A stretch of DNA of 60,595 bases, counting the filler, from Bipalium vagum (lineage: Eukaryota), in NCBI GenBank assembly GCA_037834085.1. It is 3 parts of 3 records of this genome, joined end to end, with 100 filler letters (N's around TTAATTAATTAA, not from the genome) between each part and the next. Parts side by side here need not be neighbours in the genome. Positions count along the whole stretch, not along the records: positions 1 to 17,628 come from JBBMKC010058115.1; 2 more parts are not named here. One strand, 5' to 3'. Positions 690 through 17,628 of this stretch are shown one piece after another. Both the position numbers and the translations under genes were made by a program. A model generated the notes under the pieces. That model searched no databases. It was not told the origin of the DNA and saw only the letters and a program-made list of their open reading frames with translations. Position 1 is the stretch's first letter, and each line of letters begins with the position of its first letter.

Positions 690-3600
690 CTAACAGAATG
701 GACACTGTTTGAAATGTTGATTGCAAAGCAAACAGATTTTGTGACCACATTCGAAAGCAGAATCCATTGGTCTGATGATACAGATATCGCAAATCTAAAT
801 TTCAATAAGCTTCCATATAACAATATTCATTAAATACTTTTTCTTCAACGACTGCGTTTGGTTCTACGCCTTGTGCGTTGAAAATTCTTTTCGATTCATT
901 TTCAATAATTCGGTCTCTTTTAATGATCATCATTTTTTGCTTGTTGCTGAATATTCTTTCAATTTCTTTTCTGGTTTCTGATTGAGAACAGTGCTCAATG
1001 GCCGTATCTCCTTTTGAAGTCTTAAAATATATATTGCCGCCTTCAGAGATTATTGCTTTAATGGCATTTAGAAATCCCAAATATCGGTTTTCCTTAGTAA
1101 ATTTTAAAAAAATGATTATAAACTGCTTACATAACATATACATCATTATTGTTGGACATTTTCTTAAACAACTGCATCAAAGCGGTACGACCTTCACTAT
1201 CTTCATTATCTACATTATCAGTTTCGAAAATCAGATTTTGCACCAAATCCATCGACTCAGCCTCAATAGCAACTTGCAAAGGTGTTTGAAATTTCTTATT
1301 TTTCACATTAATATATTTTTCTGCCTTTGTCTTAAAAAGAATGATTTTTTGACAAAAATTAAATTTCTTTTCTTTGAACAGTCTAGTTAAAAGAGTTTCA
1401 CCATTGTCGAAATAAAGTGAACTTTTAATTTCTATCTTCAGTAAACATTCGAAAGAATCTTCGTCACCCAGCTTAGCTAATTGATACAGTACGAGATCAA
1501 CTACCGACTTTTTAATGTCGATATCAGCACGAATGACCAACAATTTCAATAAATATGATATTTTTTCATTCATATTTTTGTCATTCTAGGAAAACTTAAT
1601 GAAAACAATAATATATTCATATGTATTACATCATGTAAAGGTTGATCTAAGTTTGATATGAGTTCCAATAAAGCTGTATTTCCTTCGTTATTGACGGAAT
1701 CAACTTTTGCACCAGCTTGAATCAGAAGTTCACAAAGGTCGATGTTTAAAAATTTAACTGATAAATGAAGCAAAGAATTTCCTTCTTCATCACAACTGTT
1801 TGCTTTATCTTCATCTAATGCTTCAATGAAACACGGATAAATTTTATTATTCATTTTGATACACAAGGTCAAAGAGTTTTCCCTTTTAGATATTGGAAAA
1901 GAATCTGTAAAGATTTGATTACCTATAGATTTATATTTAATGAGATATAAATATATTTTAAGGAGCATTAAAAATACAACTTAACATTTTATAAAATTTT
2001 TAATAAAATGTATGAAATTATTAGGTTGTCGAATTAGAAATGTCGTTTATATAAATTGTAAATTGTTTTGTTAAAATAATTTGTTTAACTATTAATTGCG
2101 TGGGTTGCTAAGTGTTGGCCGGCAAATATTGAGAGACTGAAGAAAAATTCGGAGATGCAGTGGGCGATGATTCCAAATTAAAAATCTTTATGAAAGCATA
2201 CCAAGAAGATTTCAAAAGGTTATTAAAAATAAAGGTACTAATTTTGAGTATCTTAATTATTCATGTGAGGTTCACTGCTTATTAAAATTTGTTTGATCAT
2301 TTAAAATGTAAGTAAAAGATGCTTCACTGATATTTCAATTGACCTTTCAACATTTACAAAAATTTTGATCTGGAAATATTTGATTGGAGACACGAACTTC
2401 AACATATTCTCTGATATAGTTAAATAAAGATTGAATCAAAATATTTATAGTTATATATGTCAATCATTTAATGGAAATGATATGGGTGGCTCAAAACACG
2501 TGGACGGAATAGTATTAAGTTAAAACGAATTAGAAGCAATACGAGATCTCCTGAACAAAATTTAGTCTTAAATGTATTATTTTTTTATTAAATATTTTTT
2601 AAATATTTAGATGAACCTTCGTTCGAAAAAAATGACAAAGGCAAGTATCATCTAAAAACCTTTTCAAAAAGAAAATATATTATTTCGACTTTCTAATACC
2701 GAAAATGATATTAGAAATTGTAATTTAAAAACCTCAAATACATCAGAGTCATTGAATGTTTTATTTAATAAATTATTTTTAATATCTGTACCATTTTTTT
2801 AAATACATAATCCTAATTGAACTTGTAATAGAAATACTATTTTTGTTAAATTTTTATAATTTTATACAGGTGTTCCGCACAGTTTTTGATTATCGAAGTG
2901 TTCCGTGGCGCAAACAGCTTAGGAACCACTGCTATATAGTATATAGGTTAATTTTTTTTAATAACGACTCAATCTTTAAATGAATAAGAAATATATTTAT
3001 TATTTTTAGTATCTTATTTAAAACTACAATATTGTTCTTAATTCTGAGATAAATTATTTTGTTTAAATTGAAATACAAAAAAGTAGGAAACGTGTTTTAT
3101 AAGGACATTAAAATATGGTAAAATTTGTTATTTTACTGGCAAAATTCTTAAAACAGACACTAATTTTTTATTTGAGTGTTAAAAAAAACTATTCTTAAAG
3201 TATACGAATTTTAGTAATTAAATTTGATGTAAAATTTTGTCCTACAGTATACACGTATTCATGATTATCATTTTCCAATTCCCAATATGTAACTGTTCCT
3301 TGAAGTTTTTAAGCCAGCTAATAGTGGGATAGATTATGCAGTATCAGTAAATGTGTTTCAAAAATATTTTCATTAATAAAGTAAAAATATTTTCGATAAA
3401 AGTATAAATATCATATTCTTTTAAAATATTTTAAATTAAAATATATAATGAGTAAAATACCTCTTTTCCTTTGAATACTCTCATCATGAAGAAACTGAAA
3501 AATGTAAAACTTTAGATAAAAATAAAAAAACGAACAAAATATTTTAAAAATATAATAACAAAAACCCAGTTTTTTATAGCTTGATTTAAACAAAAATTGG

Positions 3601-5573
3601 CCATAAGGTATAATATCCCTGCACAATTTTATCTAAAAAAATGGTTACAACGCATAAATACAAGACATTTAATCAACAAAAGTTTCGTAACGTCGTTTTT
3701 TTGGATTATTTCCACATAAATTTGCAAATATATTAATAAAGATGACACCATATTGCATTCTATACTTGTCATTTAAATTCTGCAATAAGTTCCAATCTAC
3801 AATAGTCTTTATCAATAGATTTTGAGAGAAGTCTTGCTTGTCAAAATCATTTACCAAAAAATACATCAATTGAATTAGAGTTGAAATAACATTCAATTAT
3901 TTGAAATAATTGCTATCGGAAAATGAACAAAAGACATTTTTGAACTATAATATCCATTATTTTGTTCAGAAGAAATAAGAACCAGATTCAAAAAACAATG
4001 ATATTTAATATCATAAAGGAATATGAATGGTTTTAAATTTAAAGGTAATTTTTAAATAATTTTACCAATTAATAAAAACTTTATGATTAATTAAAAAATA
4101 AAATAAATTATTGTTCGGTCAAAAGTGGTATTTTTAAAACAATGAAAATATTAATTAAATAAAGTTTATCATTTATTTGAACCTCCATATATAGACCACA
4201 GTCTGCTCCATTTTTCATCAACTGATCACAAAGATTTTCGCACTCACGTATCACAGCACAATGGAGAGCAGTTTGTCCCATCTTCAAGAAAATGTTCATG
4301 AGAAGATCGTTACAAAATACTCACAAATCCAGTTTCATTAATGTTTGGTGCATCATCAATCAAATATTGGCAATGGTCAATCATTCCATTTAAAATTGCC
4401 TCATGCAGTGGACTTTGTAAATACTAAACAAAAAAACATTGACAAATTTATTTCAAAAAAATATTTATTGATTAACTTTATTCTTAATGTTACAATTGAC
4501 ATTGAAACTTTTCAAAACTGACATACACTTGTCATGACACAAGATAATGGCCAACGAAAAGGCAGTTCCCAATATCTGAAAACAAAACACCATGAGTTAA
4601 AAATTGAAGAAACTAAAGTTTTTATTCACTTCATGATTGTAATTGGGATCAACAAGACCTTTATTCAAAATATATTCGACCATGTCTGGGTCATTGTCAC
4701 ACACAGCCGTGTGTAATATCGATAGCTTTGCCTTGAATCAAAATGATGATCGAAAATAACAAAGTAAATTAATAGTACTTTTTCTCTGTATTTGAGTAAA
4801 GATTCTCTATTCAATATCAACTTTATTATTTCATGATGACCTTTCTCTAAAGCGATTTTCTTTGCTCTCTCCCACGACTACAGGAAATATTCTTTATTTT
4901 AAAATTTTAATATTCTCTCTAACCTCACTTTCAAATATACTTTTTTTCAATATCTCATGAACAAACACATAACTTCCATATTGTGCTGCTACTTCCAAGA
5001 ATGAGCACGGAATCTACAAAGAAGTCGATTACAAATTTCTTACTTATAAAATTTCACCATTTTTCGTTGACCATTGATAATGTTCGCACAAGAAATCAAT
5101 TGAAATCCTTCTTGATGGTGATCTCTGATAAATTTGTAAAACAGAACCTGAAATTCATTTTACATTTAAATCGATGAGAAAAATATCTCAACCTCCTTGC
5201 ATAATTCAGTGTTTAGTGATTGTGAATTATTATTACTCAAAATATTTTTGATATAAAAAATTTCCTGTAATGAAATCACAATGCGATGGAAAAATTTTGA
5301 GGGACTTACTGAATCGTCGGTTGGCATTTCTGAAATTAATTTTATGATCTTATGCGCTTTATTCTTGAACATTATCTCTAGCCAAGATTGCCTTAACTTA
5401 AGGCTTTAAGTAATTTTCGCATCAACTATTAGAAGAAATTTACATTATTATCCGCAGTGGTCAGAGCTCCACAGACATGAAGTTCAGCAAAACCATTTTC
5501 ATCATCATTGATAATAGAGTCACATATCTTTGATTGCATCTTAATAAACATTTTCAGGCATTTTGGTATTAAA
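690..5573 (-). CDS. Multi-exon ankyrin-repeat protein with C-terminal C3HC4 RING finger (putative E3 ubiquitin ligase; architecture like the C-terminal half of Mind bomb)
   Basis: GT-AG introns 795-837 (43 nt), 1093-1141 (49 nt) and 1586-1629 (44 nt) join the listed ORF fragments in frame. Last exon 690-794 reads ICDICIIRPMDSAFECGHKICLLCNQHFKQCPFC*. Ankyrin motifs: GNSLLHLSV, GNTALL, QTPLQVAI, GRTALM. Upstream ankyrin exons: 4183-4281 (MGQTALHCAV), 4325-4423 (YLQSPLHEAI), 4477-4575, 4630-4731, and further exons to ~5573. The 5' end and the exons in 3250-3920 are unresolved, so this could be two genes. Confidence 0.8.
2120..2513 (+). mobile_element. Tc1 transposon 3' remnant inside an intron
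   Basis: Translates to ..NLYESIPRRFQKVIKNKG.. (Tc1 transposase C-terminus). Terminal GGGTGGCTCAAAACACGTGGACGGAATAGTA at 2484-2513 closely matches the Tc1 end at 17808-17838. Confidence 0.65.
2868..2931. mobile_element. hAT (Charlie-like) element terminus
   Basis: Ends ...CAGCTTAGGAACCACTG; reverse complement CAGTGGTTCCTAAGCTG resembles hAT-Charlie TIRs. Partner end not found. Confidence 0.4.
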
Positions 5574-7030: not shown

Positions 7031-7925
7031 ATAAAATTTTATTCCCCTTTTTGTATTAAATTTAACATTAAACTATGATTATTATTTTTTCTACATACAA
7101 ATTTATATTTCTTTCCTTTTCGCTCCTTTTTTCATCATTATTATTAACTTAATTCATATTTTCAACACCTCTTGTACTCACAGCTGCTTTTTGAATTTTT
7201 AATTTGATAAATAATTTTCTTTGATAACCATTTCCTTTCTCCATTAAAAATATTTGTTTAGGTTTTCTATTTCAATATATTTATGTAATTTATCCTCGGT
7301 TAATTCTTCAGTTATTTTTTATAAAAAAATTGAGAAAAAAAATATTTTTTAATATTTGATTAATTATACTGGATATGATAAAGGATTTATTTTGGTATAT
7401 AGTTCATGAAAATCGGTTCAGTATACCGAAAGATATTAATATCAAAAGTTTTTATTGATATTATTTTTTAGTTTTTATTATCTTATTCACTATATCCATA
7501 GCGATTCATTTTTTAAAAATGTATCCCAAACAAATTCATTTATTATTTTATTTTTAGATATATTGTGAGCATCGTATTTCAGAGTCATGTCCTGAAAGTA
7601 TGATTTTCCCTACTACTTATTCAAATGAAATTAAAAGATATGAGTAAAAGGGTACTAAAAATACCATTTTCAATAGGTGTAGAACCTTTAAGAAAGTAAT
7701 AGAAAAATCTGTAGAACATGAAGATCTGAAAGTAATTTCAATCCCAATAAAAACGAAGAACTATTTTAAAAATTAAGACACCAACGCCTGCAACATTGCA
7801 AACTAATGTCATGAAAAAATTTTAATGTCATGGGTGCAATAGGTTATAAACGTAGATAGAGGAGACATGTCACACCAAAAAATCTGTGAGTGAGTATTCG
7901 CAATTAAGTGGGACCAGTAGAATGT

Positions 7926-8856
7926 TTAACCATTCAATGAATTATATTGTGCAAAAGTGTAAAGCTAGCGTAGAAATATTCAGAGAAATTCAGTGTTTCG
8001 TGTTGGAATACTGGATGAGTAGTTATATTGTCTACCACGTATGGGAACACGGCTGATTGTCAAAATAAGGAGTACATAGAAATAATGTTCTTCTTACCGA
8101 TCTTTTGTCTGGATTTTTAAACGGTGTTTGCCTTTTTATTTCTTTTTAACAAAAATGGTAATTCAAGTAAGTTGAAGAAAAAAGAATTTCACAGTTGAAA
8201 GGTGAAGGATGGCTTGTGAACATGATTCTCATATTTAAAAGAGAATGATTGTGATGGATTTTCGCCACTTCTGAAACCAGACCTCAAAAAGGAGTTGGGA
8301 ATTTTGGAAAGCATGCTAAGCTATGAGCTGGGTTGGAAATACGAAATAATCGTGAACCAATGCCTTCTGATGTCTGACCTGATTCCAATTCTAGTGGGTC
8401 TTTTAACCACCTGAAAAGATGCCATGTAGCTGAATCTCATCAAGAACAGTGGTTAATAGACAAGTCTGTTGATATCTTCATGTTAGCCTAGATCGCCCGA
8501 AATTTGATCAGGAAATTGGGTTGAATTCCAGTTGAGACTCAGAGTTACTCCTCTGTTGATGAGCCCATGTGGTTGATTTCCACTGGCAGAGTACCTCATT
8601 GTCCTTACTAATAGTATCCTCACGTTAGCTTAATTCTGATAAGTTCGTGAAGAAGGGGTAAAAATCAAAAACACACCCATACAATCAAGGATCTGAAGAT
8701 ATCCGAATTAAATCAAATCGAAGAAGATAAACAATTTTATGTATAATAATCTAGTAGTCTAAATAAAGCGTTTTAAATAATAGTAAAGTGATTAACCATT
8801 CAATGAATTACGTTGTGCAAAAGTGTAAAGCTAGCGTAGAAATATTAAGAGAAATT
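7926..8856 (+). mobile_element. Degenerate LTR-retroelement-like relic bounded by 65-bp direct repeats
   Basis: TTAACCATTCAATGAATTA..GTGCAAAAGTGTAAAGCTAGCGTAGAAATATT.AGAGAAATT at 7926-7990 and 8792-8856. The interior is richer in GC, with weak pol-like fragments. Confidence 0.4.
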
Positions 8857-8907
8857 GTGATCAATTTTGATAATAACAACATTTCCCTGTCAGATTATCA
8901 TTTATTT

Positions 8908-11900
8908 CTATCGGTTATTGTCGGGCTGCAATTTCAGGAATAATGAAGTTTTTAAAAAGACTATATAATTGAATTGCTTGGAAACTAAATGCTTTGATTT
9001 TTATGATGGAATTGTTATTAATGATTGGAAAAGCACTTTTTAATGAAAATGTTTTTGACCAGAACAACTTATTTTTCAAAATTAAAAAATAATATTACTT
9101 CAATGACATTTTTGATTAATTTTACAATTTCTTTATGGTCCATAGATTTTGCTAAGTCCAAAGGAGTTTTTCCGTCCTATAACATAGAAATGAATAACTA
9201 TGTATAAAAATGTAATATAAGAGAAAAAATATATAATAAATTTTGAAAAATGTTATAATTTTAGTTCAACTCCTGATTTTCAAAAATTAATAATATTTCT
9301 TGTAAGAGATTTAAAAAGTTATTTTTAGTGATTATTATATAAAGTAAGTACGGAATGACTGAAAATTCAATAAGTCTTTAACCAAGTCTGATTTCAAGTG
9401 TATAAAATGAAAAATAGTATTCTTTTATATAATATTTATGGGTTGCCTGAAGAGTGCTGAAAAAGTCAACATATACCTGGTTCGATTGTCTTTTTACTTT
9501 TTTAACTTTACAGCATTGGATATTGTGCTATTCAAAAAGTCTATTTCTTTATGGAAGTTGTTTTCTAAGCGAATTTTTGAGTCATTTATATATTTATTCA
9601 ATTTTTGTAGGATGGACAATATAAAATTGATTTAAGTATTTTTTCAAATAAAAATATCATCTCGATAACACAGATTTTGCGAACTGATGGAAATATATTC
9701 AACTATTTTATCATCATTCCTTTCTTCTATATTGCAATTTTTTTTAAAAGTTACTAATTTATCTGTTGTCGTAAAATTTTTAATTTAATTTTTTAATTAT
9801 TATAATTTTTATTATTATTATAATTTTTATTATTATTTTAATTTTTATTATTATTTTAATTTTTTAATTAATTATTATAATCTGTAATTAAATTTTTTTA
9901 ATTAATTAATTTTTTAATTAATTTTTTTTAATCTGTTGCATACCGCTATTCAGACTATGGAGATGCCTAAATATCTCATTTAAGAACCGTACTTTGGACA
10001 TCTTCAACTCATTTTTATGAAATTTACAAAATCTATTTTCACAAAAATAAGATTTTCTCCATGAAGCTCAATTAGGCGAAATAGCAGATTTTCTTTCGAT
10101 AACATCTGTATGTGTGCTGTAGTTATCACCATCATTATTTCTTTTAAAAATGTGTCTAAATTTGAAGGTGAATTATATAAAATTGAAGAAAATAAATCTA
10201 AGAGAATTTTTATAATATTTATCCAACTAACTTTGATTTCACCTGTTAATTTATATATTGAATTTTCTTGAATATTAAAAAAAAATTTACTAATATCTGT
10301 TTGAAGCACTCCAGCAATCATTCCATGACACAGTGGTTGGGAACCGGTGGATTGGAGGAATCATTTAAACATATTTATTAATACAATTTGATTTTAAGAA
10401 AATATTTTTATTCCACTATTTTTAAAATTAAAAAATAATACATTTTGATAATTAAATAAAACTTCATAAGTTAATTAAATTGAAAATTTCAAACAAGCAG
10501 ACCATTACGGTATTCAGAAATAGATAGAAATTTTGTTGATCGTTATCGATCCACAAAGATTCTATCATAAAATCTTCAAGACTCTGTGCTTTGCATCCGT
10601 GAATATTTTTCAAACGTTACAATTTGTTTAGATATTACAATCGATTACTTAAATCCAGAAAATAAAATTTTGATAAAAATGTATTTCACTTACTTGACAT
10701 TTTACATTGATTTCACATTTTTCCTGTATCAATATTTTTACCACTTCAATGTGACCTCTTAGGCATGCAAAATGTATTGGTCTCGATTCCTAAAAGAATT
10801 AAAATGGTTGCTTTTTTCTAATTTAAAAAAAAAATTACAGTTTCAGTTTCAATATTAATTTTGCAATTTTGCTGGATCAAATATTTTACTATATCAATGT
10901 TACCATTGCGACTTGCCAAATGAATTGGTCTTTCCTTCTAATATAAAAAAATTTATCTAAATTATAATCAACAATAAATACATGGTTGTCTTCACTTTCT
11001 ATATCACAGTTTTCATGGATCAATAATTTCACAATTTCAAAGTATCCTTTCTCACATGCATAATGGATGGGCCGCATTTTCTATGCAAATAGAAAACGTA
11101 TCATTTTTCAAATCATTAATAATTTATTACTAAAATGTTTTCACTTTCAATATTGCATTCTTGCTGGATCAATATTTTGGTTATTTCAAAGTGACCTTTC
11201 TCACATGCATAATGAAGAGGCTTTTCTTTCTAATTAAATAAAAATTGATTAGTTTTTTATCCAGAAAAATAATTAATTACATCTTCTGTTTCACACTCAA
11301 TATTGCATTTCTGATGGATCAGTAATTTCACAATGTCAACATAGCCTTTCTCACATGCATAATGAATTGGTCTCCGTTTCTGAACAATTTAAACGTGTTT
11401 ACTTTTAAAAGTTTTTAAAAATTTTTTACACTTTCATCTTCACTTTCAATATTACATTTTTTTTGGATCAATAACTTCACAATGTCAGCATGACCTTTTT
11501 CACAGGCATAATGAATTGGTTTCTTTTTCTAAAAAATAAAATAGTTTAGTTTTTGTAATCATCGATAATTAACTACTAAAATGCTTTCACTCTTAATATT
11601 GCATTTTTTCTTGTTCAATAACTAAACCATTTCAATATAACCTTTCTCACATGAATAATGAATCGGTTTCTCTTTCTCATAAATTAGTTTTTATGAAACA
11701 AAAATATTTGAATTACATTTTCAGTTTCACACTCAATATCGCATTTGTGGTGTATTAATAACTTCACTATTTCAATTTGGTCATTTGAACAAGCATAATG
11801 AATTGGTCTCCATTTCTAAATAAATCAAACTAATCTTTAAAATAGTCAATAATAAATCACTCGTTTGCTTTCACTTTCTATATTACACTTTTGCTGAATT

Positions 11901-12961
11901 AGCAATTTCAAGATTTCAAAATGTCCTTTTTCACATGCATAATGAATGGGTTTCTTTTTCTAAGCAAATCAAAATCGTTCACATTTTATTGAATCATCAA
12001 TAATTATTTACCGAAATATTTTCGCTTTCAATATTGCACTTTTGTTGGATCAATAGTTGAACTATTTCAAGATGACCTTTCTCACATGCATAATGAACAG
12101 GTTTTTCTTTCTAATCAAATAAAAAAAGGCATAGTTCTTTTAATCAGAAAAATAATTAAAAACATTTTCAGTTTCACACTCAATATTGCAATTTTGCTGG
12201 ACCAGTAATCTTACAATATCAACATGGCCTTTCTCGCATGCATAATGAATGGGTCTCCATTTCTATATAAATAAAAGGTTATTTTTTATATTATTAATAA
12301 TAATCAGTTACTAAAATGTTTTCACTTTCAATATTGCAGTTTAGCTGGATCAATAATTTCACTATTTCAAAGTGACCCTTTTCACATGCGTAATGAATTG
12401 GTTTCTCTTTCTAAATGAAAAGCAATTACCCTCCCAAATTAATGAAAATATCGTACTAAAATATCTTCACTTTCAATATTACATTTTTTCTGAATCAATA
12501 ATTTAACAATTTCAAATTGACCATAAGAAAATGCAAAATAAATAGGTCTCTTTTTCTGAAAATAATAAACTTTATATTTTTCCAAGTATCAATAACTACT
12601 TACATAGTTTGCTTCAGTTTCAATATTGAATTTTTGATCAATAAAAAATTTCACAATTTCAATGTAACCATAAGAACATGCGAAATGAAATGCTTTCTTT
12701 TTCTAAATGAATGGGAAAAACAAAAAGTCGTATCAAAATTATTAAAATCATATTTTACTTATCTTAACTTAGCTTATTAAACTAACATAAAAATCATTTT
12801 GGTTGATGATTTCATCAAGAAACACTTTTTCAAAATTGTTTCTGACTCCGTCCAAATCTCCTTTTACCAAAAACTTTTTAAAATTTTCATATTTCCTTTA
12901 AAAGGTTTATATTTATAATATCAACCTCAAAATAAAAAAAATAAAATTACATTTTCGCCAT
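8908..12961 (-). CDS. Ankyrin-repeat-only protein, one repeat per exon (14 repeat exons plus capping exons)
   Basis: Candidate ATG at 12961 (MAKM|KYENFKK..IINQNDFY). Phase-0 repeat exons: 12604-12702, 12457-12555, 12312-12410, 12164-12262, 12012-12110, 11861-11959, 11717-11815, 11577-11675 (contains TAG), 11430-11528, 11281-11379, 11131-11229, 10982-11080, 10839-10937 (all 99 nt) and 10694-10789 (96 nt). Consensus KxxPIHYACEKGHxEIVKLLIQxxCNIExExxx. Then exon 9099-9176 (DGKTPLDLAKSMDHKEIVKLIKNVIE) and a probable last exon 8908-8925 (PDNNR*) followed by AATAAA. Confidence 0.88.
9780..9930. repeat. A/T-only low-complexity tandem repeat in an intron
   Basis: Iterated units such as TTTTTATTATTATTATAA. 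Confidence 0.7.
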
Positions 12962-15900
12962 CGATAAAAATTGATTATCAATATTCCAACGTTTACCTAA
13001 ATTAATATATAATTATCATCAACCATTAAAAAGAAAAATATTTTTAATAATACGTGAATATATAAATGGAAAATCTACAAGCTAACTTAAATTTTCTAAA
13101 ATTCAATTTATTTTTGAAATTTAAAATAACAAACTTACAAAGTTTTCCGCATTAACTGTTTAAAACAAAATTTTGTTATATTTTTTTAAACAACTATATT
13201 TTTAATTTATTTTATATATATGAGAAACTTAGGATATTCTTAGTTTCTTTTAAAAAAATCAACAGAAAAATAAATGATTAAATTAGAAGAAATTTAATAA
13301 GTAAACAAAAAAAGACTTATTTTAAAACAAATTTCCAGGGTTAGACAAAAATTAAAGTGTAATTTAGACCTTCCCAACAGCCAATTGACTACATGTTGAT
13401 TGATAAGGTGATGTTGCATCTTAATAATTTTGGAATAAATATGTTCAGGGTTTGAATTTCAATCCACGTCAACCTAATTTAAAATGTGAGTAGAATATTA
13501 GACAAATAAATAATATTCTCTATCTAAAGAAATTTTTAGAGGGATAGGCTTTAAATTCAATTCAATTCTATATTAAAAGAAACTAAAATATTTTCGCTCA
13601 AAAAAGACTTGCAAATCGAGTACATTTTGTGTATGTGTATAATTTTAAAAAAGAAACCCATTAAAAATATAGAAATAACATTTCATTCTTTCATAAAAAT
13701 AAATATTTATAAAAATATCAAAGCTAAAAAATTCAATTTTTATTTTATAAAACCCAAAGACAAATAAATATCCTCAGATGAAAATTGTACATATAATCAA
13801 AATTACCATTTTCAATAAAATGTGGTATTAATTTTGAATAAAATTGAGATTTATTAATAAATTAAAATTAAAGTTATTTCTTATACTTCTTAAAGGTAAA
13901 TTAAAAAATTGAGATAAATATATACTACATTTATTATGTCTTCCTCTTTTAAAATATATTTTTTAATCGTTTAATTTTCTCAATTTATTTAATTTATAAC
14001 CTTCTCCTTTTGATATTTTTTAAAATCATTTCTTTTAGTTAAAAAATGATTGACATATTTAATTTTTTAAATAATTAGATTTTTGCATTAAATAAAAATA
14101 TTTTTTCATTTAATTTAAACTGTATTTTATTTCCCATTTTAAATATTCGCATAATTTTTCTTTAAAGGAGGGATTAAAATCTGTTGAGATTTTTAATGCT
14201 TGTCTCATATCTATTGTTTTGTTAATAATTATTTTATCACATCTCTTAATTAAATATCATTTTTTATTTATTGTTAAATGATCTTTATTAATTATAATAT
14301 AAATAGTTTTTCGAAGCTCATTAATAATCTGAAAATAGTTTTATAAGTTAAAGTATATTTTGGTGGTTTTTCAATTCAGATTTTTCCTCAAATATATCCC
14401 ATATATTCATTTTCTATTTTAATTTTTTCTTATTTTAGTTTATAATTTTTTGGATGCTATGTAAAATAAACGTGCTAGAATCGAAGACTCGTTTCTAAGA
14501 ATGTTTCTTACCTTTTTAAACTTTTTATTTTTAATATTTCTAATTAATGAGTAATGGGTTTATAAATATCTGTTAATATTCCAAAAAATATTAACCAATT
14601 TTCCTGATTTAAAATTACAAAATAATGAATCGTTCGAATAAACAATATCGTAATAGAAATCAATTTATTCAAAAGAAAAATCACTAAACAATAATATTCC
14701 TCAATTCAATTCTTCTTTTGTCTTTTCTTTTCGTCGTAACCGTTTCTCTGTCGTTTTGTTTCTCCTCTTTTATTTTTTATCCACTTTGATTCTGGTTCCC
14801 TGTTTTGTTCTCGCTGTGGAGAATCTGGTAGTTGCTTTATACTCTTCAGTTTTCCCTCATTGGCCAATCTTAATCACAACTGGGATATCTTCCCTCTTCT
14901 TGCTTTGCTACTGAGAAACCTGCAGCCTTCAATTATCCAGTTCAACCCGGCCTTAGCTAAATAATTGACTCTGCGGTGTCCCTCTCTATCTCTGCGTGGC
15001 CATCCGATCCCTTTTCCATTAGAATAATAACAATATGGGAGCTTTAATTATTCAGCTCAGCCCAATCAGACACAAAAACACACAAACAGACACAGACACA
15101 TTCTTTCTATTTCAATAAACATTCAATAACATTATGCATTTTCTAATTACACGACACACAAAACTGACAATAACCAACGCCAGACACACTCCTTGACACT
15201 CTCCCAGTTTTTACTTTTTTAAAAACATAAATTTTACAATTCTTTTAGAAAATTAATATTATTGAACTCTGAAAGTTCTCAAAAATTTCGTCCCGCGCGC
15301 AAGTAGTGCATAATGCTTGAATTTACTTCAAATTCTTCAGAAATGGCTGGTTAATTTTGAAATTATGTATGAAAAATGAAATTTAAATGATCCGGATTTA
15401 TGATTATTTAAACAATATGCATTTATATATGAATTTTAACTAAAAACATGTAATATATTAAAGTTCAAAATTCTTGCCAATTTATCGCACGTTCCCTTTA
15501 TATCCGAAGCCGAGTTCAGATCAGGACAACCTGGGTCTATTAAAGTACCCAAAAATCATCTAATTTGATTAATTTTCCAGAACTATCCTGGAAGTACACT
15601 GACATAATTTACTCTAAAACTTTTTCGACAATTTTACTTTTAAATATTAAAGCGATTTTTATTTCTCAATTCTGATCTGTATTTATGACTTACTTTTCAA
15701 TCATGTCAAAAGTTTTCAGAGTTGAGGGTTTCCTTAGCGACAAAACGGCATAGAATCGAAATTATTTTCTTTTATTCCTATCATGGTAAAAGAACGAAAA
15801 TAATTACTTTCACCATCAGAACCAAATTAATTTTCATTTGTCTTAATCGTGACATTTATTAATCAATTTTCAATCTGTCGCAAAACTAGATAACTATAGG

Positions 15901-16451
15901 CAGAAAATTGTCATTTAAAATTTTTTCTTATGATCATAAATATTTATACTATTCTTACTGACTACTAAATTTCGGAATCGCAACAATACCTAATTGCGTT
16001 GGTCTATTTCTAATTTCCACAGTATTGGGAATTAACCTTTTGTTTCTTTTGGATATTTAAACGATAAATCCGGTGACAAATAATTTTTTGAAAAACTAAT
16101 CCTAGATCATAAATGATCAATATAAAAAGCAGTCTCTGTGACAACAAAAATTTATTATTATTTTAATTAATAATTCAATAAATTAACAAGTTTGTTTTTA
16201 TCAAAGATAAAAAAGGAAGAAATAAAAATGTGAAATAAATAAAACCAATATTGGTTGAGAGTTACGTATATTTACAAATTTATCGAATTATTATTATTGT
16301 TATTATTATTATTATCGTAATACTACTGTATAAAAATGAAATGATATATCGATTATTGACTTGTGCACTTTCAATGAAACAAACACACTCACATACAACA
16401 CACTCAGACACTTCCTGATTAAATTCAATCTAATTTTTAACGAAGGAAAAA

Positions 16452-16907
16452 TCAGGACCTCTTGTGCCTTTTGGCAGCCAAAATGTCATCAATATCGTCG
16501 CAACAATCCAGAGACGAAGAAGTAGAACACGTTTCGTTTTGACTATTGGCCAGAAACAGCTGTTTGTCGTTCCTGTTATTTTCATCGATCTTGAACTGGG
16601 TCGTGCCAACATTGTCCTTATCGATGTTTTCAAATTTGCTTTGCTGACTATCGACGGACGAACTGTTTCCATTAGTTCCACTGTTCGGATTAGTTCCGGT
16701 GCTCGTTGAAGAAATCACTGATCGCGATGTGGATGCATTGGGAGTTGAGTTTGTACTGCCAGATAGATCATTAGAATCTTCATCGATTAAACGAAGTGAT
16801 GATGATCGAGACAGATTGGATTGATAACTCTGGTAACTGCTGTTTGCATAACCATTGCATCTTGACTGGCGCATTAAAATTTGCACTTGATTCTGAATAT
16901 CACGGCA
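16452..16907 (-). CDS. Terminal exon of an unidentified gene; Ser/Thr/Asn-rich, ending in basic KRHKRS
   Basis: Acceptor ttttttag at 16908 opens a 151-codon frame (CRDIQNQVQILMRQ...AAKRHKRS*) with coding-like GC content. A possible upstream exon at ~17547-17628 (LRLITVGRSCALLLKDIGGSCRSHHKF|gtaatt) runs into the gap. Confidence 0.6.
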   Translation of the reverse strand, partial: CRDIQNQVQILMRQSRCNGYANSSYQSYQSNLSRSSSLRLIDEDSNDLSGSTNSTPNASTSRSVISSTSTGTNPNSGTNGNSSSVDSQQSKFENIDKDNVGTTQFKIDENNRNDKQLFLANSQNETCSTSSSLDCCDDIDDILAAKRHKRS

Positions 16908-17628
16908 CTAAAAAATCCCAATTAATTCAGAATTAATTGTTCATGATAATAGGTAATAATTTTAAGATTACTTAAAATCCTATAACAGTTTCTCAAATAA
17001 AAGTCGTTACTCGCGCAGATAATTCATGTTTAAGAATTCGATTTGAAAACCCAATTTAAATAAATTAAAAACGAACGATAAAAAAAAGAACTATTCAAAT
17101 TTTTGGCATTTTTTCTCATTTTCAAAAAATTTTAATCGGAACAAAAATAGTATTCATTAAGAGAATAATTATTAATATGTTGAATTAAAATGATCCATGG
17201 GTCGTATTTCATTATTGACATGTTGAAACTTTTATTTTAATTAAGTTTCTGTAATTGTCATTTTAGGAAATTAATAAAAATTGATTATTTACTTCTAAAT
17301 TATTATTTAATTGATAAATTGTCATTAGAAAGTTAAATACCATTAATCGTTACCATCACTTCAAACAAATGAATTCAAAGATTGTATCGGAAATCTTTTA
17401 TCTAAAATTTTATCTTATATTACACTTTAATTAATTAAATTTATATTAATAAATATTTATCAGTGGAAAAAAATAATTTCGATGTATTGTCTATTGATTT
17501 GTTTGTTTTAAATCTATTTATCAGATCATACACAGCAAATAATTACAAACTTATGATGGGATCTGCAGGATCCACCAATATCTTTAAGCAACAGAGCACA
17601 GGATCTACCAACAGTGATCAACCTCAGC

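What the first reader, a model, noticed from the sequence alone, without database searches (positions are those of the whole stretch)
10694..12702. Cassette-like ankyrin array: 14 interchangeable phase-0 exons with splice junctions in the variable hairpin
Seen: 13 exons of exactly 99 nt and one of 96 nt, all phase 0, separated by 41-53 nt introns (period ~140-152 bp). Framework residues (PIHYAC..G..EIVKLLI...CNIE.E) are nearly fixed. Variation concentrates in the last three residues (ANY, DIL, NIL, TEN, NIS, SKR, DES, TED, DNH), the first residues (KKK, KKR, KEK, KWR, KRR, KMR) and helix 1 (CSY, CEK, CSN, SRN, CLR). Established: the beta-hairpin and helix 1 form the ankyrin binding surface, the positions randomised in DARPins. 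Repeat-per-exon arrays under exon shuffling are described for LRR/TPR candidate immune genes of the brown alga Ectocarpus. Inference: skipping, duplicating or swapping any exon keeps the frame and creates a new hairpin at each junction. The locus could therefore generate a combinatorial repertoire of small binders with no other domain, a candidate diversified recognition system. Caveat: repeat-aligned introns also occur in ordinary ankyrin genes.
Basis: partly seen in the sequence, partly recalled or inferred. Interest (0 to 1): 0.8.

Follow-up and report, generated by a model that had tools for sequence, protein, structure and literature searches.

The report
Ankyrin exon array of RING ligase gene
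The 14 one-repeat ankyrin exons are real, but they are the variable front end of a 12-kb flatworm gene that ends in a RING (ubiquitin-ligase) finger and has about 100 paralogues; nothing shows that splicing shuffles them.

Summary
On the minus strand, 14 ankyrin (ANK) repeats are each encoded by one phase-0 exon (13 of 99 nt, one of 96 nt), separated by 41-53 nt GT-AG introns.

The array is not a stand-alone gene for small binders. A 1.5-kb intron leads to an in-register C-cap exon. About ten paralogue-conserved ANK-like exons follow, then larger ANK exons and a C-terminal RING-HC finger most like MIB1 RING3.

The genome, probably a triclad planarian's, holds at least about 100 such genes, with 3-27 repeat exons each. 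N-cap and RING exons lie on the same strand and in the same order on 11 of 11 contigs that carry both.

Arrays grow by tandem duplication of exon-plus-intron units, mostly in 3-unit blocks. The variable hairpin and helix-1 sites show dN/dS of 0.5-0.6, against 0.25 for the framework. That is relaxed constraint, not positive selection.

No RNA data exist, so combinatorial splicing is untested and I consider it unlikely. My best reading is a lineage-specific family of Mind-bomb-like ANK-RING E3 ligases whose diversity is encoded in the germline.

The parts
12951..12961 (-). Putative first coding exon (ATG GCG AAA AT), followed by a 55-nt GT..AG intron.
   Evidence: Sequence reading. It gives an in-frame join to the N-cap exon (11 + 109 nt = 40 codons). 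Inferred, with no RNA support.
12787..12895 (-). N-cap exon (K-Y-x-x-F-K-x-x-L-x-x-G-D-x-x-G-V-R-N-N...), followed by an 84-nt intron.
   Evidence: Conserved upstream of the array in 15 of the 20 paralogue loci. A profile of it finds 101 places in the genome.
12604..12702 (-). ANK exon 1 (99 nt, phase 0).
   Evidence: Ank_3 22.7 bits.
12457..12555 (-). ANK exon 2 (99 nt).
12312..12410 (-). ANK exon 3 (99 nt, type B).
12164..12262 (-). ANK exon 4 (99 nt, type A of the 3-unit block).
   Evidence: 87% nt identity to exon 10. Their downstream introns are 80% alike.
12012..12110 (-). ANK exon 5 (99 nt, type B).
   Evidence: 82-84% identical to exons 3 and 11.
11861..11959 (-). ANK exon 6 (99 nt, type C).
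11717..11815 (-). ANK exon 7 (99 nt, type A).
11577..11675 (-). ANK unit 8 (99 nt, type B). In-frame TAG at codon 18 and weak splice sites; a probable dying or skipped pseudo-exon.
   Evidence: No variant base in the DNA unitigs.
11430..11528 (-). ANK exon 9 (99 nt, type C).
11281..11379 (-). ANK exon 10 (99 nt, type A).
11131..11229 (-). ANK exon 11 (99 nt, type B).
10982..11080 (-). ANK exon 12 (99 nt, type C).
10839..10937 (-). ANK exon 13 (99 nt).
10694..10789 (-). ANK exon 14 (96 nt). It lacks codon 33 and ends at a GTAAGT donor.
   Evidence: A 96-nt closing exon followed by GT is found in 16 of 21 arrays.
9177..10693 (-). 1.5-kb intron holding a dispersed repeat (about 10120-10350) and a non-conserved 118-aa ORF (10360-10007).
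9099..9176 (-). C-cap ANK exon (D-G-K-T-P-L-D-L-A-K...), AG|78 nt|GTAATA. It supplies the missing codon 33.
   Evidence: Conserved in 10 paralogue loci. Pfam Ank 19.6 bits.
7988..8790 (+). Interspersed repeat inserted in the long intron between the C-cap exon and the next conserved exon.
   Evidence: At least 935 candidate copies at 74-83% identity. Paralogues have only 0.4-1.3 kb at this place.
4180..5560 (-). Paralogue-conserved module of about 10 short exons (approximately 5560-5438, 5393-5295, 5273-5178, 5150-5052, 5013-4912, 4877-4773, 4734-4621, 4581-4474, 4423-4316, 4296-4180). They encode degenerate ANK-like repeats.
   Evidence: tblastx finds them collinear with L035, L037, L044 and L046 at 41-78% aa identity. 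They are homologous to the middle region of transcript-like P0198. Some hit Pfam Ank. Boundaries are approximate.
838..1980 (-). Three larger 3' exons with canonical ANK repeats and a linker (ORFs 1980-1573, 1585-1130, 1176-838).
   Evidence: Pfam Ank_2/Ank_4. 64% aa identity to L037 over 1926-1642. The MIB1 ANK domain is among the best solved-structure hits.
690..794 (-). Last exon: RING-HC finger (C-x2-C-x10-C-x-H-x2-C-x2-C-x6-C-x2-C) plus the TAG stop (692-690). It is preceded by a 43-nt GT..AG intron (837-795).
   Evidence: zf-C3HC4 E 0.008, 16.5 bits, full model length; best solved match is MIB1 RING3, E 0.0022; 50 genomic matches.

Best explanation
The array is the N-terminal, variable-length binding domain of one long minus-strand gene, running from about 12961 to 690.

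Gene layout, 5' to 3':
- a start exon and an N-cap exon;
- 14 one-repeat ANK exons, of which unit 8 is defective;
- a C-cap exon;
- about 10 conserved degenerate ANK-like exons;
- larger ANK exons;
- a C-terminal RING-HC finger.

The product would be a Mind-bomb-like ANK-RING E3 ubiquitin ligase, with the homogeneous repeat array as the likely substrate-binding surface. The ligase role is inferred, not shown.

The gene is one of at least about 100 paralogues in what is probably a triclad planarian genome. All share the N-cap and the one-repeat-per-exon design, and they carry 3-27 repeats.

Arrays change length in the germline by unequal recombination or tandem duplication of exon-plus-intron units, most often three units at a time. 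Because every unit is phase 0-0, every gain, loss or exon death stays in frame.

Sequence variation sits at the positions that are least constrained structurally in any ANK repeat, and it evolves under relaxed purifying selection. Diversity therefore lies between paralogues. It is not shown to be generated by splicing.
For: Anatomy.

Evidence for one gene rather than two:
- The closing 96-nt exon has no stop and a conserved donor in 16 of 21 arrays.
- The C-cap exon is in register and is conserved in 10 loci.
- The downstream exons are collinear across paralogues.
- P0198 is an uninterrupted 666-aa ORF on a 2.1-kb environmental contig. It carries the same N-cap, the same Cys-containing repeat type, the C-cap and the middle module in a single ORF.
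- N-cap and RING exons lie on the same strand, N-cap upstream, 5-12 kb apart, on 11 of 11 contigs that have both.

RING: all eight ligands are present with canonical spacing. It gives a weak Pfam hit, and MIB1 RING3 is the best solved match.

Family size: 101 N-cap places and 1174 candidate repeat exons.

Duplication mode:
- Period-3 signal in this array, permutation p = 0.002.
- Introns were co-duplicated: 75-80% identity against a shuffled 95th percentile of 62%.
- Across the family, lag 3 is the commonest same-array nearest neighbour (30 of 84).
- Multi-repeat duplication of ANK repeats is a known pattern (PMC1553488).

Selection: overall dN/dS 0.31, surface sites 0.56, framework 0.25.

Organism: mitochondrial HSP70 is 88% identical to Dugesia japonica mortalin.
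Against: - There is no transcript evidence for any splice junction. The long introns (1.5 kb and 3.5 kb) and the full gene model rest on paralogue collinearity and on one related environmental ORF.
- The RING hit is below Pfam's gathering score (16.5 against 21 bits).
- P0198 ends in a TIR domain, not a RING, so it supports the fusion of array and middle module but not the RING end.
- The TAG in unit 8 means this particular copy may be a pseudogene.
- NG86-type dN/dS on short, recombining, AT-rich repeats is crude, and episodic positive selection at a few sites could be missed.
- Some of the roughly 100 loci may be haplotigs or dead copies.
Confidence: 0.7

Rival explanations
1. One reading: the locus generates a combinatorial repertoire of ANK binders by skipping, repeating or swapping the interchangeable exons at the RNA level or somatically.
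For: - All units are phase 0-0, so any skip is in frame.
- Unit 8 would have to be skipped for an intact product, and skipping it gives a 188-nt in-frame intron.
- LRR exons of brown-algal ROCO genes are reported to be alternatively spliced (PMC11378527).
Against: - No RNA run holds the locus.
- The only DNA run shows one structure. Its 'joints' have 20-32 nt anchors typical of paralogue cross-matches.
- Apart from unit 8, most splice sites score within the family's ordinary range, though several donors (units 2, 3, 6 and 11) are also weak.
- Introns of 41-62 nt favour intron definition (inference).
- There is no excess nonsynonymous change.
- The array is fused to a large conserved C-terminal part, so the products would not be small binders.
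Confidence: 0.08
2. This particular copy is a young pseudogene of the family. The TAG in unit 8 truncates the product, or triggers nonsense-mediated decay, and the locus is decaying.
For: - In-frame TAG, supported at depth about 20-35 with no variant base.
- Unit 8 also departs from the consensus at conserved sites (S8, M16, N21, K28).
- Two repeat insertions lengthen the introns.
- Dead copies exist elsewhere: L038 is a degraded near-copy of L039.
Against: - The other 13 repeat exons show no stop or frameshift. Nor do the N-cap exon, the C-cap exon, the conserved HSPs of the downstream exons, or the RING exon.
- The weakened splice sites of unit 8 fit loss of a single exon rather than loss of the gene.
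Confidence: 0.3
3. There are two adjacent genes: an ANK-only gene ending just after exon 14, and a separate downstream ANK-RING gene that happens to be duplicated together with it.
For: - A 46-nt GT..AG intron after exon 14 would be followed at once by TAA.
- 1.5 kb and 3.5 kb separate the parts.
- No RNA evidence is available.
Against: - The donor after the 96-nt exon is conserved and there is no in-exon stop in 16 of 21 arrays.
- The next conserved exon supplies the missing codon 33 in phase.
- P0198 holds the array, C-cap and middle module in one ORF.
- N-cap and RING have the same order and strand on 11 of 11 contigs.
- In paralogues the same gaps are only 0.4-1.5 kb, and here they are inflated by repeats.
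Confidence: 0.1

Closest known systems
Mind bomb E3 ligases (MIB1/MIB2)
   Same: An ANK repeat domain is followed by a C-terminal RING-HC finger. The RING exon's best solved match is MIB1 RING3 (E 0.0022). The MIB1 ANK domain is among the best matches of the 3' ANK exon.
   Different: - No MIB/HERC2, ZZ or REP domains were found; the N-terminus is the ANK N-cap itself.
- Only a single RING was seen.
- The ANK region is far longer and variable.
- There are about 100 paralogues, where most animals have one or two genes (the last point from my own knowledge).
Ectocarpus ROCO-LRR and NB-ARC-TPR families (PMC3341825; PMC11378527)
   Same: One repeat per exon, variable repeat number, rapid gene birth and death, and exon-level duplication remodelling the repeat domain of a large family.
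   Different: - The repeats are ANK, not LRR or TPR.
- The partner domain is a RING, not ROC-COR or NB-ARC.
- Diversifying selection is reported there but was not found here.
- Alternative splicing is reported there and is untestable here.
- The organism is an animal, not a brown alga.
Vertebrate ankyrin genes (ANK1/2/3) with 99-bp repeat exons
   Same: Many of the 24 repeats are each encoded by a single 99-bp phase-0 exon (recalled from Gallagher et al. 1997, not verified here).
   Different: Those arrays have a fixed repeat number and positionally conserved repeats, and they are single genes. Here the arrays are homogeneous, variable in length and massively paralogous.
Plant XB3/XBAT ANK + C3HC4 RING proteins (PMC3596331)
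   Same: N-terminal ANK repeats plus a C-terminal C3HC4 RING, forming a multigene family of E3 ligases.
   Different: Independent lineage, few repeats, and no one-repeat-per-exon variable array was reported in the abstract I read. No sequence relationship was tested.
Lineage-specific expansions of E3 substrate-recognition families (F-box, MATH-BTB in nematodes and plants; fish TRIMs). Own knowledge.
   Same: Large, rapidly turning-over families that couple a variable binding domain to ubiquitin-ligase machinery. They are often proposed to target pathogen proteins.
   Different: Those families show positive selection at binding sites, which was not detected here. The binding module here is a length-variable ANK array.
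DARPins (designed ANK binders)
   Same: The most variable exon positions (2, 10, 11, 32, 33) coincide with five of the six randomised DARPin positions.
   Different: This coincidence is expected for any natural ANK family, because those positions are structurally free. Position 30 (DARPin 33) is a conserved Glu here, and each repeat carries two conserved Cys (positions 9 and 25).

Membership tests
Ankyrin repeat (Pfam PF00023 / Ank clan) | 33-residue repeat scoring above the curated threshold, with the TPLH-like motif and a helix pair. | tested here: met
   Eight of nine tested exons score 28-33 bits against the 21.1 cut-off. Exon 1 passes Ank_3 only. Consensus x-x-R-P-I-H-Y-A-C-x-x-G-H-x-E-I-V-K-L-L-I.
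Ankyrin repeat (Pfam PF00023 / Ank clan) | Tandem stack bounded by capping repeats. | tested here: met
   N-cap exon and C-cap exon 9176-9099.
RING-HC (C3HC4) E3 ligase | Eight zinc ligands C-x2-C-x(9-39)-C-x(1-3)-H-x(2-3)-C-x2-C-x(4-48)-C-x2-C. | tested here: met
   Read directly from 794-693: spacings 2, 10, 1, 2, 2, 6, 2.
RING-HC (C3HC4) E3 ligase | Profile score above Pfam's gathering threshold. | tested here: inconclusive
   zf-C3HC4 E 0.008, 16.5 bits against a cut-off of 21, but over the full model 1-40/40. phmmer against PDB: MIB1 RING3 E 0.0022, RNF123 E 0.012. 50 paralogous matches in the genome.
RING-HC (C3HC4) E3 ligase | E2 binding and ubiquitin transfer. | not testable with these tools
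   Needs an in-vitro ubiquitination assay.
Mind bomb (MIB1/2) orthologue | N-terminal MIB/HERC2, ZZ and REP domains ahead of the ANK repeats. | tested here: not met
   The gene starts with the ANK N-cap. No such Pfam domain appeared in any window ORF scanned. P0198 also starts at the N-cap.
Mind bomb (MIB1/2) orthologue | ANK domain followed by C-terminal RING(s). | tested here: met
   Only one RING was found.
Exon-per-repeat shuffled receptor families (Ectocarpus ROCO/NB-ARC-TPR type) | Each repeat encoded by its own exon. | tested here: met
   169 of 194 units in 21 arrays are AG|99 nt|GT without a stop.
Exon-per-repeat shuffled receptor families (Ectocarpus ROCO/NB-ARC-TPR type) | Exon duplication or shuffling and variable repeat number among paralogues. 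| tested here: met
   3-27 units per array. 84 of 166 exons have their nearest neighbour in the same array, against 10.6 expected. About half have their nearest neighbour in another array; I did not separate gene duplication from inter-locus exchange.
Exon-per-repeat shuffled receptor families (Ectocarpus ROCO/NB-ARC-TPR type) | Diversifying selection on the repeat surface. | tested here: not met
   dN/dS is 0.56 (CI 0.46-0.69) at DARPin positions and 0.64 (0.53-0.76) at the 8 most variable codons. This is a counting method, not a codon model.
Exon-per-repeat shuffled receptor families (Ectocarpus ROCO/NB-ARC-TPR type) | Alternative splicing of the repeat exons. | not testable with these tools
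   No RNA run holds the locus.
   A conserved donor follows exon 14, the C-cap exon is in register, downstream exons are collinear, and the gene ends in a RING.

The most novel reading that the evidence does not exclude
A planarian-lineage family of about 100 ANK-RING E3 ligases acts as a germline-diversified recognition system, for example restriction of viruses or other intracellular parasites. In this reading the one-repeat phase-0 exons let binding arrays expand, contract and lose units without breaking the frame. Related environmental transcripts carry a TIR effector on the same scaffold instead of a RING. Exon skipping, as would be needed at unit 8, may add isoform diversity.
Probability: 0.2. 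Interest if true: 0.75.

Novelty: new variant of a known kind. Interest (0 to 1): 0.45.

Why it matters
If the gene model holds, flatworms carry a very large, apparently undescribed family of E3 ligases. Their substrate-binding domains are length-variable ankyrin arrays built from one-repeat exons. I found no paper describing it. A survey of 393 RING/U-box transcripts in Schmidtea mediterranea does not mention ankyrin.

It would be an animal counterpart of the brown-algal exon-per-repeat receptor families. It also gives a clear example of exon symmetry making repeat gain, loss and exon death tolerable.

Related environmental transcripts carry a TIR domain on the same scaffold. Planarians lack classical adaptive immunity and have poorly known pathogen receptors, so an immune-type role is worth testing. 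The more exciting claim, a splicing-generated repertoire, has no support so far.

Tried and rejected
1. Ciliate genetic code (TAG = Gln) as an explanation for unit 8. Rejected: 149 of 150 repeat-exon matches have no stop, and HSP70 genes have open frames of 600 aa or more under the standard code.
2. Tandem Repeats Finder did not report the array. The units are only about 70% alike, below its threshold. This does not count against the array.
4. RNA evidence. The look-up of sequencing runs listed one run, not on record as RNA and kept as contigs. Laying it gave unitigs identical to the window and no variant at the TAG. The 'joints' with 20-32 nt anchors were dismissed as paralogue cross-matches.
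5. TIR domain in this gene. None was found in the window by tblastn with P0198 or by Pfam. The genome's 20 TIR_2 matches include ORFs of about 600-680 aa without stop codons; all six I fetched and read lack the ANK array and are unrelated to this family.
6. The 118-aa ORF at 10360-10007 as a C-terminal domain. Rejected: it is not conserved in paralogues and overlaps a dispersed repeat.
7. The profile search of 1.84 billion proteins was dominated by generic giant ANK proteins. Only P0198 carried the family signature.
8. Word searches with P0198 found only P0271 as true kin. P0311 and P0378 (ANK + zf-C3HC4_3) lack the family motifs.
I did not try another route.
10. All searches were exon by exon, by reference.


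Full report
**1. Observation**

The feature lies on the minus strand. Scanning for AG|open frame|GT found 13 units directly; unit 8, which carries a stop, came from the frame translations. Their coordinates are:
- 12702-12604, 12555-12457, 12410-12312, 12262-12164, 12110-12012
- 11959-11861, 11815-11717, 11675-11577, 11528-11430, 11379-11281
- 11229-11131, 11080-10982, 10937-10839 (all 99 nt)
- 10789-10694 (96 nt)

Introns are 41-53 nt. Nine exons were tested against Pfam. Eight pass the Ank threshold and exon 1 passes Ank_3. Exon residue 4 aligns with Pfam Ank position 5.

Unit 8 has an in-frame TAG at codon 18. It also has the weakest splice sites of the array: its acceptor is in the 2nd percentile and its donor in the 5th percentile of 170 family exons. 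DNA unitigs identical to the window cover it, with no alternative base.

A variant genetic code does not explain the TAG. 149 of 150 genomic repeat-exon matches have no stop, and HSP70 genes are open over 600 codons or more.

**2. Organism and family**

The assembly is 440 Mb in 272,664 contigs. Its mitochondrial HSP70 is 88% identical to Dugesia japonica mortalin and about 81% identical to those of trematodes and molluscs. The source is therefore most likely a triclad planarian. This fits the roughly 25% GC content and the tiny introns.

A single repeat exon finds 1174 candidate places in the genome, and all 150 that were scored are significant. I fetched 20 paralogous contigs and scanned them with a family PSSM. 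Counting the window, there are 21 arrays with 194 units. Of these, 169 are AG|99 nt|GT without a stop.

Every array has the same design:
- a conserved N-cap exon;
- 3 to 27 one-repeat exons separated by introns of 21-62 nt, median 47;
- a closing 96-nt exon that ends at a GT donor.

A profile of the N-cap exon finds 101 places on about 100 contigs.

**3. The array is not the whole gene**

The closing exon lacks codon 33 and has no stop in 16 of 21 arrays.

A profile of the window's exons, run against 1.84 billion proteins, mostly returned generic giant ANK proteins. It also picked out P0198 at 34 bits per repeat. P0198 is an uninterrupted 666-aa ORF on a 2.1-kb JGI contig, most likely a metatranscriptome mRNA. 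It has the same N-cap and eight repeats of the same Cys-containing type. After those come a C-cap, a middle region and a TIR domain.

The middle region of P0198 matches DNA downstream of the arrays, on the same strand. This holds in the window and in 10 paralogue loci.

tblastx of the window against the paralogues shows a collinear series:
- a C-cap exon at 9176-9099 (AG|78 nt|GTAATA), which supplies the missing codon 33 in phase;
- about ten exons of 33-41 codons between 5560 and 4180;
- larger ANK exons between 1980 and 838 (Pfam Ank_2).

The last exon (794-693, stop at 692-690) follows a 43-nt intron. It encodes a complete C3HC4 RING pattern. The Pfam hit is weak (E 0.008, 16.5 bits, full model length). 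The best solved-structure match is RING3 of MIB1 (E 0.0022).

The RING exon has 50 matches in the genome. On all 11 contigs that carry both an N-cap and a RING match, the two are on the same strand. The N-cap is upstream and the two lie 5-12 kb apart.

The two long introns of the window gene are inflated by dispersed repeats, with at least 935 and at least 64 candidate copies respectively.

I therefore read one gene, from about 12961 to 690, encoding a Mind-bomb-like ANK-RING protein. No junction has RNA support.

**4. How the array evolves**

Within the window, exon identity peaks at lags 3 and 6 (0.76 and 0.77, against about 0.70 at other lags). The permutation p-value for period 3 is 0.002. 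Units 4/7/10, 3/5/8/11 and 6/9/12 form three types.

Introns of the same type are 75-80% alike, against a shuffled 95th percentile of 62%. Exon-plus-intron blocks were therefore duplicated as DNA.

Across the family, 84 of 166 exons have their nearest neighbour in the same array (10.6 expected). Lag 3 is the commonest distance, with 30 cases. L046 and L051 show further 3-unit duplications. Multi-repeat duplication is the known mode for ANK repeats (PMC1553488).

**5. Selection**

I used 62 independent closest exon pairs. NG86 counts with Jukes-Cantor correction gave these values:

| Site class | dN/dS | 95% CI |
|---|---|---|
| All sites | 0.31 | not computed |
| Six DARPin-randomised positions | 0.56 | 0.46-0.69 |
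| Eight most variable codons | 0.64 | 0.53-0.76 |
| Framework | 0.25 | 0.22-0.29 |

The 16 most recent pairs give the same picture. The repeats are under purifying selection, which is weaker at the surface sites. No excess of nonsynonymous change is seen.

The method is crude for short, recombining repeats, so rare positively selected sites cannot be excluded.

The family consensus has some specific features. Cys occupies positions 9 and 25, where canonical repeats have Ala. The segment E28-S-E30-D is acidic and conserved.

**6. Splicing hypothesis**

No RNA run holds the locus. The single DNA run shows one structure.

Apart from unit 8, most splice sites score within the family's ordinary range, although several other donors in this array (units 2, 3, 6, 11) are also weak. 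Only 46 of 167 introns are multiples of three. With introns this short, intron definition and constitutive inclusion are the default expectation; that is inference.

The one place where skipping is called for is unit 8. Joining exon 7 to exon 9 would remove 188 nt in frame. That fits evolutionary exon death as well as it fits regulated skipping. It also leaves open that this copy is a young pseudogene.

**7. Comparison and verdict**

The closest known families are:
- Mind bomb E3 ligases: same ANK plus C-terminal RING, but this gene lacks the MIB/HERC2, ZZ and REP domains, so it is not an orthologue.
- Brown-algal exon-per-repeat ROCO-LRR and NB-ARC-TPR families (PMC3341825, PMC11378527): same exon logic and turnover, but a different repeat and a different effector, and diversifying selection was not reproduced here.
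- Vertebrate ankyrin genes with 99-bp repeat exons (from memory).
- Plant XB3-type ANK-RING proteins (PMC3596331).

I found no description of such a family in planarian papers.

The reading as a stand-alone combinatorial binder cassette is not supported. What is there is a large, lineage-specific, length-variable ANK-RING gene family. It is moderately interesting, and an immune-type recognition role is possible but unproven.

Noticed in passing
window 7988-8790 (+), inside the intron between 9099 and 5560: An interspersed repeat of about 800 bp with at least 935 candidate copies at 74-83% identity in the genome. Its plus-strand ORFs (7856-8053, 8767-8940) share the internal motif N-H-S-M-N-Y-[IV]-V-Q-K-C-K-A-S-V-E-I. 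GC content is higher (about 33%) than in the surroundings.
   Followed up: partly
window about 10120-10350, in the 1.5-kb intron after ANK exon 14: A second dispersed repeat (at least 64 candidates, 74-94% identity). It overlaps a 118-aa minus-strand ORF (10360-10007) that has no Pfam hit and is not conserved in paralogues.
   Followed up: partly
family consensus, all arrays (e.g. window 11959-11861): Each repeat carries two nearly invariant cysteines (positions 9 and 25, where canonical ANK repeats have Ala) and a conserved acidic E-S-E-D hairpin stem. The related P0198 has a third Cys at position 29. Their role is unexplained; packing, metal binding or redox are possibilities.
   Followed up: no
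P0198 / L061:58-2058 and P0271 (JGI environmental contigs): Two transcript-like ORFs (666 and 686 aa) have the same N-cap, repeat type, C-cap and middle module, but a C-terminal TIR_2 domain instead of a RING. This is an effector swap on the same ANK scaffold. The source organism is unknown.
   Followed up: partly
G000 contigs C201406, C42250, C101885, C236217, C53769, C265140 (L055-L060): At least six ORFs of 600-680 aa without stop codons have a TIR_2 domain preceded by a long helical region. L057 and L058 look like a SARM1-type ARM-TIR-SAM protein by eye. The genome has 20 TIR_2 matches in all. They are unrelated to the ANK family.
   Followed up: partly
L038 (C24097) versus L039 (C2259): L038 is a degraded near-copy of the L039 array, with stops in two units, lost splice sites and a 736-nt gap. 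It is a dead paralogue or a badly assembled haplotig, and is evidence of gene birth and death.
   Followed up: no
L039 5932-6116, L040 651-855, L048 1929-2126, L052 619-813 (array-strand coordinates): Gaps of about 185-205 nt inside otherwise regular arrays hold recognisable but altered repeat units: shortened in L039 and L052, lengthened to 102 nt or more in L040 and L048. Individual exons therefore change length or decay in place in other paralogues too.
   Followed up: partly
window 9775-9932: An AT-rich minisatellite or microsatellite block (periods 12, 14, 18 and 30) inside the 1.5-kb intron.
   Followed up: no
window 13000-17628: The region upstream of the gene was not analysed. It holds a 151-aa Ser/Asn-rich minus-strand ORF (16907-16455) with no Pfam hit, and GC rises to about 0.26-0.32 over about 14000-17500.
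   Followed up: no
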